64,000 nt of DNA. Origin: Mytilus edulis. Its lineage: Eukaryota. The stretch lies in assembly GCF_963676685.1 (NCBI RefSeq), contig NC_092346.1, positions 66,588,001-66,652,000 on the forward strand, read 5' to 3'. Under the pieces are notes generated by a model. It did no database searches and was not told where the DNA came from. It saw only the letters and a list, made by a program, of their open reading frames with translations. The stretch's first letter is position 1, and each line of letters begins with the position of its first letter. The translations under genes and the position numbers were made by a program. Below, in pieces: positions 1 to 20,300 of the stretch.

Positions 1-420
1 TTTACAAACAATACACGGAACATGCTTATTGTTACTTTTAAAATCGAATGCATATTTACAACAGTTATGAGAGGTGTTTTCGTTAAAGTCATACACAAGA
101 AGTGGCACTGATATATCATTTTAAATTAAATGATATTTCGTCAAAATTACATAAACCATCCCTCCTACAACAGAATAGGTAGAAAAAACACTTATATATA
201 TAACGTTTGCGCTTTTAAAAAACATCAGGACAACCAACCCTATTTCAATAGATTGTGCGTTCATAAAAATGTATTTAGTTTGTCAATACATTCCCACCCT
301 TGCATTATTTACTTTCTAGTATATTTGTCAACATTTGCATAGTATTAATCAAATGTAGTGATTCTAAAGTCAACACGTTGTTTCCATTCATAAAAGTCTT
401 CTAGCCATGCATTGCGGAAT

Positions 421-899
421 TGAAACAATATATGCTCACCTTCTACTTGCACAGGGGTAAGGCCGTATGTCGATGACTATTGAAACAATATATGCTCACC
501 TTCTACTTGCACAGGGGTAAGGCCGTATGTCGATGACTATTGAAACAACATATGCTCACCTTCTACTTGCACAGGGGTAAGGCCGTATGTCGAGGACTAT
601 TGAAACAATATATGCTCACCTTCTACTTGTACAGGGGTAAGGCCGTATGTCGAGGACTATTGAAACAATATATGCTCACCTTCTACTTGCACAGGGGTAA
701 GGCCGTATGTCGATGACTATTGAAACAACATATGCTCACCTTCTACTTGCACAGGGGTAAGGCCGTATGTCGAGGACTATTGAAACAATATATGCTCACC
801 TTCTACTTGTACAGGGGTAAGGCCGTATGTCGAGGACTATTGAAACAATATATGCTCACCTTCTACTTGCACAGGGGTAAGGCCGTATGTCGAGGACTA
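421..899. repeat. 60-bp tandem repeat x8 (exon-containing minisatellite)
   Basis: Eight near-identical 60-nt units starting at 421, 481, ... 841. Only three variable positions (unit offsets 9, 30, 54); 481-660 is identical to 661-840. Confidence 0.98.
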
Positions 900-2586
900 C
901 AAAAGACAAAATACAAGATAGGAATATGAAAAACATGTATTCTTAAGCAGAAACTACACGTATGCGAAAGACATAAGCAGAAATTTCAACAATTGTTACA
1001 CATTATTATTTAAATGATTAGAAAACAATGGTTAAAATAACGGCAAATTGTAATAAAAATATTTTAAAGTCAAATTATCAAACAGGAACGTTCGAACACA
1101 GCAAACTGTGATATGAATGAAACAATCTTTCAGATACACAAGCAAAAGCATTTATTTTTTAAACTCAAGGAGGTTTCACAGTATGACATTTAAAGAACAT
1201 GGATATGGTTGAAACTTTCAAATACAAATTGAATAAAAATCAAAAATGTACTGTTCATGTCAATATTAATATATGTGCATCCATTACAAGAAGCTGAAAA
1301 CGCACGTGTTTAAATCCGATCCAATACTGAGTATAGAGCATGTAGGTTTCATGAGGATACAAATTTCAAACACATACAGTGTATAAACAGAACAGCCTCA
1401 TTAATACGTGTGCACCAATTACCAATACATAACACAAAATATGCAATAATTTCAACAAAGCAAACATATTATACAAAACATATATACAATGATTGCAGCA
1501 AAGGTTCTCAAAGATGTGAATGGTAACTTCAAGGATAAAAAATATAGAAAGTAAAGTCAGAAGAAGTCACCAGACTGACAGAATATAACATGATGGTAGG
1601 GATTCCAGACCCGGTGTAAGCATTGATATAGAAAACATGAATTATTTTACACCAGTTGGTTGGACCAAACCTGTCGCTTTTGTGAAAATCATCCTGGATA
1701 CTTTGTCTTTTTCTGTTTGAACGTTCATAGAAAATACAATTCAGACAAAATAAATAGATGAAAAATGTAATCTGTGAATAAAATTAACATTGAATAAATT
1801 AGTGTTCGTCCGAAACGCTTTTTTTGACAGAAATCGAGCAGACCAGACTTATAGAACACTCGTCAATATGCTATTGCACGTTATTTAGTAGATCACTTGA
1901 TTATCAGCAGTCATCGGAGGTCATCTCGATGGCTCTTTACATGGCTTTAAATATTTAATATTGTATCAATAACTTAGGTTTAAAAATATGTTTTATTATA
2001 TATACTAGTATTCATAATCCATCTGTACCAGTACGTTACTAAATAAATAGGATGTGTGTTAGAATCTATACATGACAGACTAATGCTTTCATTCGAACAG
2101 TATACACTATACATAGTTATTAATTTAATAATGCTCATGACATTTAATAAGACTACGTATTTATTAGTAATGCAAATCAATGTCACATAGCAAACAAAGT
2201 GAAGTGCCAAAACATTAAATGCATTGAATATTTTATTGAATAGAATTAAATTAGAATGGTAATCCTCAACAACAATTCGCAAGTATATATAAACCTAATT
2301 TTACTTTGTATAACATTGTAAATAAACTTCGTACATTTAACAATAATGGAAAATATGTGATCAATTGAGTTTTATTGAATTTCAAAAAGGCTTTTTATAA
2401 CAATACAATAAAGATCAATCTACCGCTTGAAACTATACACACTTAATAAATATATTTATGGAGTTAAGTGTATGTATAAATTGAAAACACAACTATTTAT
2501 CAAAGTCAAAAACATACATTGTAGGGAGAATTATTCTTAAATGTGAAAAACATTTTTTCAGTAAATTAGAAAAGTGCGCTTACCAT
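440..2586 (-). CDS. 5' part of a probable calmodulin-like gene (gene F). ATG-only exon 2584-2586; exon 2 (37 nt, SSTYGLTPVQVE+G) present in 8 tandem copies; remaining exons lie left of the window
   Basis: Minus strand reads gaaaATG|gtaagc at 2584-2586. Strong acceptor ttttgtcttttgtag precedes exon 896-860 TCC TCG ACA TAC GGC CTT ACC CCT GTG CAA GTA GAA G|gtgagc. The phase-0/phase-1 structure matches exon 2 of the five neighbouring genes, and M-SSTYGLTPVQVE aligns with [11 protein letters not shown]. No EF-hand exon is visible in the window, so family assignment is inferred. Confidence 0.72.
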
Positions 2587-3169
2587 TTTCAGGATGTTAC
2601 GTTTACTTTCGTTCTAAACCCGGATGTTCTTACGGAGCGCCATCTACAGTCGAAAAAAAAACATAATTCAAAGCAGTACTTGAACGCAGTGTGTGTCGCT
2701 ATTTGTAAGCGGTGTTGACATTTAGTTGTTTTGGGGTATTATTAAAAGATTAAAACAGGAACAAAACTTTATAGATCCGATTTCATGTACTGATAATTAC
2801 ATTCGGATATTTTTTTTGTTCAGCTGTGATACTTAGCATTTAAAGCTAAGTATGGATTGTATTATTCTAGATCACGCTAGCCCACTGAAGTATTACGTTT
2901 GTTTTAATATTAATGTTTTAAAACATCAAGGTTATATGTCTTTAAATGGCATATGACGTGAATTTCAATGTATAATTAATTCCACTGTCCGATATCTTTG
3001 TGCTCTTGTTAAATTGATAATTGAGTTTTCTCAATATAAGGAGGGCTAGTTTGTAGTCTAAAAATAAACATCGTTAAACACTATACAGCACATGTTTGAA
3101 TGCTCTAATATTACGTTGCCTGGATATACAAGTAGTGTTCAATAAAAACACACAATTACGCAAGCTAAA

Positions 3170-17331: not shown

Positions 17332-20300
17332 TCAAACGGATAGCATCATATTAACAAAGTCTGAAATAGAAAAAGAAATCATTAATTACAATAGCAAACA
17401 TACAAATTATTGGACATATGCTACACAAGAAGAAACCGAACACACCAAGGGGACATTAAAAAAACAAATGTCGATGAATATATGCGTATCGTGTATATGT
17501 ATGTGTTTTTAATAATAAAAGCTAGAGGGACAATGCAAGTAAACTAAAAAAATATCAAGTTATAAACAACAAACAAACAAACAAACAAATATTTTATTTG
17601 CCAATCATGGCGCCCACAATGAGCGGAATAATTGCAGTATAAATTTTCAAACATAATGTAATGTAAATCAAAAAATGGTTAAACAAAGTACTTAATGTGA
17701 TTGATTTTGATTTAATTGATTAATGTAAAATATCACAGCAAATAAAGTAAGTAATTTGTAATAATAAAAATATATAATATGATATGACCCATTGTTTCTC
17801 ACTCTAGTTCTAAGGCAAAGGTAATTAAAACTGAACCAAATAAGCATAACATAACTTTTGTACTTTCAGGTTTCGTTACTTTGAAATGTTTGGTTTTTCA
17901 AGTTCATACTAGAATGTCAAATCTACTAGTATAAGGATTGGCACAGAGAAACATTTATTCTGAAAACAACCGAACAAGTCGTTGAAATTGGATATAAATT
18001 GTAAGCACCATATACTCTCAAACACAGTTATTTATACAATTAGCTTTTGGAAAAGTGTGATATCCACCAACAATCTCTTAAATTTCTTTTGTGGCAATTC
18101 TGTTCTCTTGTTCATACTGTATATTGAAAAGGATTCGTGCTCGAGATAACTATGACTTAGGAAATACTCCAGCATAGAATAGCTGTGTGTCCCAAAATTA
18201 ATTATAAAAAGTACTTGCAACTGGACAATACGTTATCAACATTCTAAAGTTTATTTATACACTACAAAATAAATTTGCATTTAAAACCTGCGTTGATCAC
18301 ATAACAGTAATATTCATAAAAAAAGAATCTATAAAACTTATGCATGAAATATTTGGCACTGGACGTTATGTTTCTTATCGTGTGCCTTTAGTGATGGTGG
18401 AAACCTAAAATTTATTAAAAACCCGGATAACAAGTTTATAATTTGATGGGCTTTTGAAATACACACAAACTATTGACAAACGTTTAAAAAAATACTGTTA
18501 AAACCCCGCCATGCAATATTCGGATAAATATAAAAGGCATCATCGGAGTTTATAAGTACAAAATAATTAACAAAGTTAACGATTAATTCAACTCCAGAAC
18601 TATGTGTATGTTCGCTCTAAACGAATATGAAATACTTGCAACTGGACAATAAACAACTGCAGTCAAAGTTACTTAATAATAACAGATTAATTTTGCAATT
18701 ATTATAATCATTAAAAACCTACATCGAACTAACTTAATCTGATAAATGACATCTTCATCACGTGTGTCTTCCATCATAGAATTGTCGTAAACATTATCAG
18801 CGATTTTATTTAAGAGATACATGTAAAAGCGCTAAAAGACGTGTAACGTTTTGGCGTTAAATATTGGACACGTTTTGGCGAACAACAATTATCGGACACG
18901 TTTGGGGGTTATGAAATCGGACACGTTTGGGAAATAGTGTACACTTCGGACACGTTTAGGGAGAAAAGACACGTTTGGGAGAATCGGACACGTTTGGGAG
19001 GAAGGACACGTTTGGGAGTGTTACATATATATTATAGTTACCATCATAGTTTACTCGTCCATTTCCTTCCTTGTCTGCCAATTTCATCATCTCATCTGCT
19101 TCCTCTTCCGTTAAACTTTCACCGGATGTTAGCATCATTCGTTTTAACTCCTCTGCACTTATGTATCCATTGTCATCTCTATCAAAAACACGTAAAGCTT
19201 CTCGTAGTTCGTCGTCTGGGTGAACTTCTTTAGACTTGGTCTCAACATAGGAAAGAAACGTCTCATAGTCTATTGTTTCATTACCTGTAAAGATTCATGC
19301 ACTTTTAGTATCTTAATTTTAGAAACGAGTCCGAAAACATCAGACATTGCTGATACGTCCTGTGGCAAATGTCATTCATGTTCAAGATGAATTCAAAAAA
19401 TGTTTCAACAAAAAACATAACATGTAAACTTTATTTACAATTATTTTTTTACTAGAGATACATCTGTAATATTAGTAGTGAGAGAAAGTGTGAGAGCGAG
19501 TAGCTAGTTTTTTCTTCAATAACTATATTCTTTATCATGGATATGAATTTTTAAAAAACAAAATGGATATTCTTATACATATTTTTGAATGTTTACCCCA
19601 ACACCCATAATCAGGTGGTGATTGTAGGGGTATTGTAAAATCCTGACAATTGAAAAGCAAATAAAAGATAGCCAAAAAAATAATGCATATGTATCTTAAT
19701 CATTTGTAAAAGATAGTAGATACTGTTAAGTTACATTTTTGTAAGTTAAATATTCCAACTCTGACCTTTGTAAGTCTTTTGGATTTTTATTTTAGTTCTT
19801 TTACATGTTTCGGAGATAAGTGTGACGTCGATTTCGCTGAACTGATATTAAATTACATTATTAGGAATTTCCTCGTATCGTTGAAGTCTAATATGTGGCC
19901 CTATGCTGTTTCTACTCTTAGGTCGGATTGCTGTCTCTTTGACTTTCTCAATTCTTTCAGATTTAAGATTATTTACAATAAACATTGTAATTAAAAAAAA
20001 ACGTGGAAAGTTTTCATTTGAACTTTGATGTATGATTGTCTCATTGGCAATCATACCACCTCAGTGGCACCTCTTTTTTTTTATACTAGTATTATTAAAG
20101 ATAAAATCACGGCATATTTATATCCTGCTATGGAATCGGCATTTTTCAACCATATATGTTCTGCACATGAATGTTTACCTTCGGGGTCAACTGTTGCTTG
20201 AATAGCTGAGATTTCTATTTCTGGAGGATTCAGTCCTAAGGCTCGGACACATTTTCCTAGTTCTGTTTTTGGTATAATTCCCGTATCAGTTTTATCAACC

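What the first reader, a model, noticed from the sequence alone, without database searches (positions are those of the whole stretch)
421..899. A minisatellite that is eight tandem copies of a calmodulin-like coding exon, each with its own splice sites and an in-frame stop in the spacer
Seen: on the minus strand each 60-nt unit is ag|TCM TCG ACA TAC GGC CTT ACC CCT GTR CAA GTA GAA G|gtgagcatatRttgtttcaatag. That is a 37-nt exon (SSTYGLTPVQVE, the positional equivalent of calmodulin exon 2 [10 protein letters not shown]) plus a 23-nt GT...AG spacer. Exons lie at 860-896, 800-836, 740-776, 680-716, 620-656, 560-596, 500-536 and 440-476. Only the first has the native polypyrimidine tract; the duplicated unit captured the acceptor TAG, the exon and 20 nt of the downstream intron. 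Known: 23 nt is below the normal metazoan minimum intron size, so neighbouring copies should not splice together. Inference: reading through a spacer hits TAG in frame (GGT GAG CAT ATA TTG TTT CAA TAG) and joining two copies frameshifts, so only transcripts with exactly one copy are productive. This amounts to a newly formed mutually exclusive exon array in which copy number could tune the productive versus NMD-targeted fraction.
Basis: partly seen in the sequence, partly recalled or inferred. Interest (0 to 1): 0.92.

Follow-up and report, generated by a model that had tools for sequence, protein, structure and literature searches.

The report
Eightfold tandem exon in mussel gene
A 60-base tandem repeat in a mussel (Mytilus) genome has copied the tiny second coding exon of a calmodulin-like gene, splice signals included, eight times in a row; the structure is real and neat, but it looks like a by-product of a genome full of short tandem repeats, and whether the extra copies change splicing could not be tested.

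Summary
Window 419-899 holds 8.0 copies of a 60-nt unit (97% matches), found nowhere else in the 1.37-Gb genome. On the minus strand each unit is an acceptor TAG, a 37-nt exon and a GT donor with 20 nt of intron.

The exon identity is confirmed too. The predicted 144-nt EF-hand exon lies 1 kb left of the window, followed by exons 4 and 5. The exon pieces, with one exon-2 copy, tile exactly onto a 150-aa database protein, called CALM in M. edulis and neo-calmodulin-like in M. galloprovincialis. Spliced transcript-sized contigs from related mussels carry the same exon.

Zero, two, three or four joined copies, or a retained spacer, all give premature stops.

The proposed function, a mutually exclusive array tuning NMD, is untested. 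All copies encode the same peptide, and I found no RNA structure or docking complementarity.

In 277 kb of calmodulin-family loci, minisatellites cover 6.7%. Two further arrays amplify an exon end plus its donor, about as many as chance predicts (expected 1.6).

I read it as a young, probably polymorphic, neutral-to-mildly-harmful minisatellite. First readers noted this stretch before, and similar exon-boundary arrays elsewhere in this genome.

The parts
419..899 (-). 60-nt minisatellite, 8.0 copies. Unit = acceptor TAG + 37-nt exon 2 + 20 nt of intron 2 including the GT donor. There is a 180-nt higher-order pattern.
   Evidence: TRF. Unit table, and period-180 identity of 99.0% against 97.4% at period 60. 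Single place in the genome.
860..896 (-). Exon 2 copy 1 (variant type C-G-A). It is one step from each of the other types, so probably the ancestral copy. It is the only copy behind the native 3' splice site.
897..916 (-). Native polypyrimidine tract and 3' splice site of exon 2 (14 of 18 pyrimidines). A TTCAT branch-point candidate lies 31 nt upstream of the exon, at about window 927.
800..836 (-). Exon 2 copy 2 (type C-A-A, GTA codon)
740..776 (-). Exon 2 copy 3 (type C-G-G). The exon is identical to copy 1; the spacer variant is G.
680..716 (-). Exon 2 copy 4 (type A-G-A, TCA codon)
620..656 (-). Exon 2 copy 5 (identical to copy 2)
560..596 (-). Exon 2 copy 6 (identical to copy 3)
500..536 (-). 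Exon 2 copy 7 (identical to copy 4)
440..476 (-). Exon 2 copy 8 (identical to copy 4). Its donor opens the unduplicated remainder of intron 2.
2578..2586 (-). End of exon 1: start codon ATG at 2584-2586, followed directly by the donor gtaagc at 2578-2583. This ATG|intron arrangement is typical of calmodulin genes. The assignment is inferred; it is the nearest upstream ATG|GTAAG.
   Evidence: Paralogues in the window show the same ATG|gtaag pattern.
1..439 (-). First part of intron 2 after the last copy. The intron continues left of the window. Exon 3 (144 nt) is at L005:1650-1793 (window -1150..-1007). Exon 4 (243 nt) is at L005:1005-1247. The exon 5 coding part is at L005:712-737.

Best explanation
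This is a young minisatellite whose 60-nt seed happened to span the whole 37-nt exon 2 of a neo-calmodulin-like gene. The seed took in the acceptor AG and the GT donor with 20 nt of intron. The array probably varies in copy number between individuals. The genome belongs to the Mytilus edulis species complex.

Shown: the array, the gene, and the reading-frame consequences. Slippage or unequal exchange first made several copies. Three of them each picked up one substitution. A 180-nt block of three units was then duplicated, and one more unit was added.

The gene can still encode its normal 150-aa four-EF-hand protein, but only from mRNAs that carry exactly one copy. Neighbouring copies cannot be spliced to each other, because the 23-nt spacer is too short. 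Any other outcome meets a premature stop.

Inferred: I expect the native copy-1 acceptor to be the main acceptor. U1 bound to each preceding donor should block the internal acceptors, whose only good branch-point motif lies inside the preceding exon copy. The eight identical donors then compete for exon 3, so some share of transcripts is probably unproductive.

I read the array as a neutral to mildly deleterious by-product of a very high minisatellite birth rate, not as an evolved alternative-splicing device.
For: The array is real and unique in the genome.

Gene model: exon 3 is 144 nt, exon 4 is 243 nt, and exon 5 follows, all left of the window. They hit EF-hand families and match calmodulin structures at E about 1e-28. 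The exon pieces tile P0012 exactly, at residues 2-13, 15-61, 63-142 and 144-150. P0012 is CAG2235466.1 / XP_071163992.1 / XP_076097895.1.

The exon-2 peptide is kept in M. trossulus and M. californianus, and in 965-1303-nt Logan contigs that encode the whole protein and so must be spliced.

Frames: 0, 2, 3 or 4 copies, or spacer retention, all give premature stops.

History: copy 1 is one step from each derived type, and the array has 180-nt periodicity.

Thirteen paralogous exon 2 candidates (28-34 nt) in the 277 kb surveyed are all single copy and outside arrays.

The region is minisatellite-rich: 88 arrays, 6.7% of 277 kb. Two other calmodulin paralogues carry arrays that amplify an exon end plus its donor, against 1.59 expected by a random-seed model, P = 0.47.

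The array RNA has no unusual stability (z = +2.9). No inverted repeat among the 25 longest listed (of 86 pairs) links the array to its introns.
Against: No transcript or read data from this species could be examined, so splice-site usage is pure inference.

The internal acceptors have the same pyrimidine content (10/18) as this gene's own constitutive exon 3 and 4 acceptors, so they may well be used.

All eight donors are identical and strong. Classical competition experiments (my own knowledge, not checked here) would favour the donor nearest exon 3. That would make the allele far more disruptive than 'mildly deleterious'.

Both exonic variants are synonymous. That is weak (P about 0.08) but compatible with selection on internal copies.

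The array has lasted long enough to collect three substitutions, which argues that it is at least tolerated.
Confidence: 0.6

Rival explanations
1. Hypomorphic or near-null allele. With eight equally strong donors competing for the exon 3 acceptor, most transcripts use a downstream donor. They retain spacers, or join non-adjacent copies, and carry a premature stop. The array then largely silences this copy of a gene from a large, redundant family.
For: The eight donors are identical, AAG|gtgagc. Every product other than one copy has a premature stop. At least 37 calmodulin-family exon-4 matches in the genome suggest redundancy. No Logan transcript-sized contig encodes the exact protein of this species complex, although one does for an M. 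californianus-like relative. That last point is weak evidence.
Against: The rest of the coding sequence is intact and identical to the annotated protein. The array is old enough to hold three substitutions and a higher-order duplication. Absence from a protein index does not measure expression.
Confidence: 0.2
2. One reading: a newly born mutually exclusive exon cluster that acts as a copy-number rheostat. Several copies are chosen, and array length sets the ratio of productive to NMD-targeted mRNA. Selection sees this effect.
For: The array has the sequence features of known mutually exclusive clusters: same length and phase, homology, length not divisible by three, and a donor too close to the next acceptor's branch region. 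The criteria are those of PMC5740500. Internal acceptors match the pyrimidine content of constitutive acceptors of the same gene. Both exonic variants are synonymous.
Against: The copies encode an identical peptide, so the choice brings no protein diversity. No docking/selector complementarity or structure was found. Formation is explained by chance in a minisatellite-dense region. Two synonymous variants are not significant (P about 0.08).
Confidence: 0.12
3. Assembly artefact: the true locus has one copy, or a different number, and the array was created or inflated during assembly or polishing.
For: No read-level check was possible. The assembly holds only one representation of the locus.
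Against: The array is only 481 bp, has no gaps or Ns, and sits in a 107-Mb contig. It has an ordered pattern of three variant positions with 180-nt periodicity, which artefactual expansion would not be expected to produce. Comparable or larger arrays are common in neighbouring loci.
Confidence: 0.05

Closest known systems
Mutually exclusive exon clusters born by tandem exon duplication (Dscam1 exon clusters, alpha-tropomyosin exons 2/3, human clusters catalogued in PMC5740500; reviews PMC9013439 and PMC6071210)
   Same: Tandem homologous exons of equal length and phase, each with its own splice sites. Joint inclusion is prevented by the two textbook means: a donor too close to the next branch point or acceptor, and an exon length not divisible by three, which gives a frameshift and NMD.
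   Different: The spacer is 23 nt, so there is no functional intron at all between neighbours. The eight copies are 97-100% identical and encode the same peptide. There are no selector/docking elements, and there is no evidence of regulated or even actual use of more than one copy. The origin is a minisatellite, not a kilobase-scale duplication.
Copy-number-variable tandem repeats that contain whole exons (for example the LPA kringle IV-2 repeat; from my own knowledge, not checked here)
   Same: A tandem array whose unit includes complete exons with their splice sites. Copy number is likely to vary between individuals.
   Different: In those cases the unit is kilobases long, every copy is spliced in frame into the mRNA, and protein length varies. 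Here at most one copy can be included.
Artificially duplicated competing splice sites in minigenes (classical cis-competition experiments; from my own knowledge, not checked here)
   Same: Several identical 5' and 3' splice sites in cis compete for one partner. The outcome depends on position and occupancy.
   Different: This is a natural allele with eight units in an invertebrate gene, and it has not been tested experimentally.
Exon-end-plus-donor minisatellites in paralogous calmodulin genes of the same genome (L087:1706-3060 and L105:5498-5947)
   Same: Same genome and same gene family. The minisatellite unit includes coding sequence and a 5' splice site, amplified into the intron.
   Different: Those arrays contain only the 3' part of an exon plus its donor, with 51-nt and 98-nt units. 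They make decoy donors, not complete exon copies.

Membership tests
Calmodulin-family gene (four EF-hand, calmodulin-type exon structure) | EF-hand domains with calmodulin-level similarity | tested here: met
   Exon 3 and exon 4 translations hit PF13499, PF00036 and PF13405 above their cut-offs. Exon 4 aligns to calmodulin residues 61-139 in many PDB entries, E about 1e-28.
Calmodulin-family gene (four EF-hand, calmodulin-type exon structure) | Conserved intron positions: an intron directly after the ATG, a short phase-1 exon 2, and a 144-nt exon 3 | tested here: met
   ATG|gtaagc at 2584-2586; a 37-nt exon 2 ending in phase 1; exon 3 exactly 144 nt. Paralogues in the window have 31-nt exon 2 ([10 protein letters not shown]) and the same layout.
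Calmodulin-family gene (four EF-hand, calmodulin-type exon structure) | The one-copy reading equals a catalogued protein | tested here: met
   The exon pieces are exact substrings of P0012 at residues 2-13, 15-61, 63-142 and 144-150. P0012 is CALM of M. edulis and neo-calmodulin-like of M. galloprovincialis.
Mutually exclusive exon cluster (criteria of PMC5740500) | Neighbouring exons of similar length, same reading phase, and sequence homology | tested here: met
   Eight 37-nt copies, 0-2 differences per 60-nt unit.
Mutually exclusive exon cluster (criteria of PMC5740500) | A mechanism that forbids joint inclusion (steric interference below 50 nt, or frameshift) | tested here: met
   23-nt spacer. 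37 is not divisible by 3, and 2, 3 or 4 copies give stops at codons 32 or 37. The criteria were read. This shows the potential only, from sequence.
Mutually exclusive exon cluster (criteria of PMC5740500) | Splice-junction reads from every exon copy to the flanking exons, bridging the other copies | not testable with these tools
Mutually exclusive exon cluster (Dscam-type, RNA-structure driven) | A docking site complementary to a selector in each unit | tested here: not met
   None of the 25 longest inverted pairs listed (of 86) in L005:1650-5450 involves the array. The array RNA folds worse than shuffled sequence, z = +2.9.
Minisatellite / VNTR | Head-to-tail repeats of a 10-100-nt unit at a single locus, not carried by a dispersed element | tested here: met
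   Period 60, 8.0 copies. One place in the genome.
Minisatellite / VNTR | Copy number varies between individuals or haplotypes | not testable with these tools
   No reads and no second assembly were available. The higher-order 180-nt pattern shows repeated rounds of expansion, which makes polymorphism likely but does not show it.

The most novel reading that the evidence does not exclude
The array is a natural splicing rheostat. Several of the eight sterically incompatible exon units are recognised. The fraction of transcripts that end up with exactly one copy, and so escape NMD, falls or rises with array length. A length-polymorphic minisatellite would then give heritable, graded expression of a calmodulin-like gene in mussel populations. 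It would also be a snapshot of a mutually exclusive exon cluster at birth, before the copies diverge.
Probability: 0.1. Interest if true: 0.65.

Novelty: new variant of a known kind. Interest (0 to 1): 0.4.

Why it matters
Tandem exon duplication is the accepted origin of mutually exclusive exons, but nearly all known clusters are ancient. The first moments after a duplication are therefore inferred, not observed. Here a complete micro-exon with both splice sites is repeated eight times, with spacers too short to be introns, in an otherwise intact gene. It is a ready-made natural test of how a spliceosome handles identical competing exon units, and of whether steric exclusion plus NMD make such duplications tolerable at once. 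If the array is length-polymorphic, allele-specific expression in heterozygous mussels would answer this without any engineering. If it proves silent or simply harmful, it is one more minisatellite in a repeat-rich bivalve genome, and a warning for gene annotation.

Tried and rejected
The first request was L005:330-1800. The second was a different, non-overlapping stretch, window:300-2700. I made no further attempt, so read laying was never used. No places were named as human-like.

The M. trossulus, M. edulis and M. galloprovincialis loci and the Logan contigs could not be fetched. Copy number in other assemblies or species is therefore unknown.

3. The metagenome-contig scan with exon 4 found only distant calmodulins, at most 59% identity, and no mytilid locus.

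4. A protein search with the exon 3 open frame found only genomic-type ORFs with intron-derived flanks. It found no transcript fragment of this species.

5. A coding reading on the + strand is rejected. The one frame without stops in the consensus is broken by TGA in the TCA-type copies, giving ORFs of 58 and 69 aa only.

6. Dscam-like docking/selector pairing or a structured array RNA: no support.

7. A dispersed-repeat or transposon origin is rejected, because the unit occurs at one place only.

8. A special process that seeds tandem repeats at exon boundaries, a lead from earlier scan notes, is not supported in my sample. With arrays moved at random, 5.2 overlaps are expected and 4 observed (P = 0.79). 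With a random-seed model, 1.59 are expected and 2 observed (P = 0.47). Two of the four overlaps merely start 5-30 nt after a donor. The sample is small (277 kb, one gene family).

9. Selection on internal copies, judged from synonymous variants: there are only two independent exonic changes, P about 0.08. This is not evidence.

All searches were made exon by exon, by reference. The joined frame was checked only inside scripts, for length and stops.

Full report
**1. The observation**

Reading the minus strand of window 1-3000 shows eight head-to-tail units between 899 and 419. Tandem Repeats Finder reports one array at 419-899: period 60, 8.0 copies, 97% matches, no indels, score 913. It is the strongest of 30 rows in the window.

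Each is preceded by TAG and followed by gtgagc. The unit is TAG, then 37 nt, then 20 nt of the following intron. After the last copy the intron continues with new sequence, so the duplication junction has at most one base (T) of microhomology. The 481-nt array matches only itself in the 1.37-Gb assembly, where the window is contig 3, 66,588,001-66,652,000.

**2. What the unit is**

I fetched the DNA left of the window. On the minus strand it holds three further exons:
- A 144-nt exon at L005:1650-1793 (window -1150..-1007).
- A 243-nt exon at L005:1005-1247.
- A 26-nt coding end at L005:712-737.

The translations carry EF-hand motifs and hit PF13499, PF00036 and PF13405 above their cut-offs. 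Exon 4 aligns to residues 61-139 of calmodulin in many solved structures, at E about 1e-28.

Exon 2 ends in phase 1 and exon 3 starts with the two bases that complete a Glu codon. With the ATG at 2584-2586, which is followed at once by gtaagc, one exon-2 copy gives a 453-nt open frame of 150 codons.

I searched exon by exon, by reference, and sent no joined model to any search tool. The search found a 90%-identity cluster of 150-aa proteins:
- neo-calmodulin-like of M. trossulus;
- M. californianus;
- P0012, called CALM in M. edulis and neo-calmodulin-like in M. galloprovincialis.

All exon pieces of this locus are exact substrings of P0012, tiling residues 2-13, 15-61, 63-142 and 144-150. The three missing residues are the split codons. 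The genome is therefore a mussel of the M. edulis complex.

The exon-2 peptide is kept in congeners and, slightly changed, in more distant relatives. Several of these proteins come from Logan contigs of 965-1303 nt that encode the whole protein. Because the gene spans more than 5 kb, those contigs must be spliced transcripts. The transcript evidence is from relatives, not from this species.

**3. Context**

The gene lies in a large tandem cluster of calmodulin-family genes on contig 3. There are at least 37 exon-4 matches genome-wide. The next best is only 57% identical, so this gene has no close paralogue. In the 277 kb surveyed, thirteen exon 2 candidates of paralogues (28-34 nt; [10 protein letters not shown] in the calmodulin genes of the window) are each single copy and outside any array. 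Only this gene has the exon-2 array.

**4. Anatomy and history of the array**

Three columns vary: TCC/TCA and GTG/GTA in the exon, both synonymous, and A/G in the spacer. Copy 1 differs by one step from each of the three derived types. The order of types is 1, a, b, c, a, b, c, c. Identity is 99.0% at period 180 against 97.4% at period 60.

The simplest history has four steps: an early expansion, one substitution in each of three copies, duplication of a three-unit block, and one further unit. Two independent synonymous changes are not significant. About 28% of all single changes in the exon are synonymous, so P is about 0.08.

**5. Consequences for the message**

Shown from the sequence:
- Reading through a spacer stops after 20 codons.
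- Skipping all copies stops at codon 25.
- Two copies stop at codon 32, and three or four at codon 37.
- Only one copy is productive.

All eight donors are the same strong AAG|gtgagc. The copy-1 acceptor has 14/18 pyrimidines and a TTCAT motif 31 nt upstream. The internal acceptors have 10/18, which is the same as this gene's own exon 3 and exon 4 acceptors. Their only yTnAy motif is a CTTAC inside the preceding exon copy, 42 nt upstream, with the preceding donor and several AGs in between.

A 23-nt spacer is far below the 50-nt donor-to-branch-point distance used as the steric criterion in the human catalogue of mutually exclusive exons (PMC5740500). So neighbouring copies cannot be joined. 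The rest is inference. U1 on donor k should hinder recognition of acceptor k+1, which favours the native acceptor. The eight donors then compete for exon 3.

How much of the output is productive cannot be derived from sequence. It could be nearly all, if exon definition pairs acceptor 1 with donor 1. It could be little, if the donor nearest exon 3 wins.

**6. Is it a device or an accident?**

There is no inverted complementarity between the array and its introns. The array RNA folds less well than shuffled controls, z = +2.9. The + strand frame is broken by TGA.

Earlier scan notes list several 'exon-boundary' tandem arrays elsewhere in this genome and suggest a genome-wide process. To test this lead I ran TRF on paralogue loci and found two more cases in calmodulin genes:
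- A 51-nt unit, 26.6 copies, made of the last 36 nt of exon 4 plus its donor (L087:1706-3060).
- A 98-nt unit, 4.6 copies, made of the last 83 nt of exon 3 plus its donor (L105:5498-5947).

In 277 kb around 26 family members there are 88 arrays covering 6.7% of the sequence, about one per 3 kb. Arrays whose unit spans an exon 3 or 4 junction are as frequent as expected. The random-seed model expects 1.59 and I observed 2 (P = 0.47). Random relocation expects 5.2 overlaps and I observed 4 (P = 0.79).

In this admittedly small sample, no special process is needed. A genome this rich in minisatellites will now and then seed one on an exon edge and, rarely, on a whole micro-exon.

**7. What could not be done**

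I did not try again, and read laying was not used.
- The metagenome scan found no mytilid locus.

So three things are unknown: whether the array is polymorphic, whether it exists in sister species, and which copies are spliced. The lack of a Logan transcript encoding exactly P0012, and the purely genomic-type hits to exon 3, say little about expression.

**8. Verdict**

The structure and the exon identity are solid. These are the two textbook routes to mutual exclusivity.

The claim that the array works as a mutually exclusive cluster tuning NMD is untested, and I think it unlikely to be an evolved function. The copies are identical in product, the array is young, and its birth is explained by chance.

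I rate it as a new variant of a known kind: tandem exon duplication, here in minisatellite form with unspliceable spacers. Its interest is moderate, mainly as a natural experiment on the first step of mutually exclusive exon evolution.

Noticed in passing
L087:1706-3060 (G000 contig 3, about 102,150,357-102,151,711, + strand): A paralogous calmodulin gene has a 51-nt minisatellite of 26.6 copies, 93% matches. Its unit is the last 36 nt of exon 4 (the DLDGDGEINYE loop) plus the GT donor and 15 nt of intron. This gives about 26 decoy donors directly after the real one.
   Followed up: partly
L105:5498-5947 (G000 contig 3, about 102,026,117-102,026,566, + strand): Another calmodulin paralogue has a 98-nt unit repeated 4.6 times, 98% matches. 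The unit is the last 83 nt of exon 3 plus its donor and 15 nt of intron. The later copies carry a 1-nt insertion that shifts the frame.
   Followed up: partly
Window 7,000-56,200 and beyond (G000 contig 3, 66.55-66.73 Mb, 70.16-70.56 Mb, 101.99-102.32 Mb): There are large tandem clusters of calmodulin-family genes, at least 37 exon-4 matches in the genome and most on contig 3. Within the window there are three near-canonical calmodulin genes and more divergent ones, all on the minus strand.
   Followed up: partly
277 kb of calmodulin-family loci (window, L003, L004, L091-L110): Minisatellite density is very high: 88 arrays, 6.7% of the sequence, several with 13-33 copies of 33-66-nt units in introns and flanks. 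Examples are L095:7830-10000 (66 nt x 32.9) and L100:6277-7179 (54 nt x 16.7, between exons 3 and 4).
   Followed up: partly
L003:7257-7705 (about 200-650 nt downstream of the stop codon of the gene): A foldback element has 155-nt arms that are 88% complementary and 139 nt apart, with a smaller 33-nt inverted pair nested inside. It looks like a MITE, and it lies in or just after the 3' UTR.
   Followed up: partly
window 2615-2644, minus strand: If transcription starts upstream of about 2650, exon 1 holds a short upstream ORF (ATG GCG ... TAG, 9 codons) ahead of the main ATG at 2584-2586. This was seen by eye only.
   Followed up: no
L110:5305-6115 and window 18946-19018: Two further arrays, 33 nt x 23.9 and 37 nt x 1.9, start 5-30 nt downstream of a calmodulin-gene donor without including it.
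   Followed up: partly
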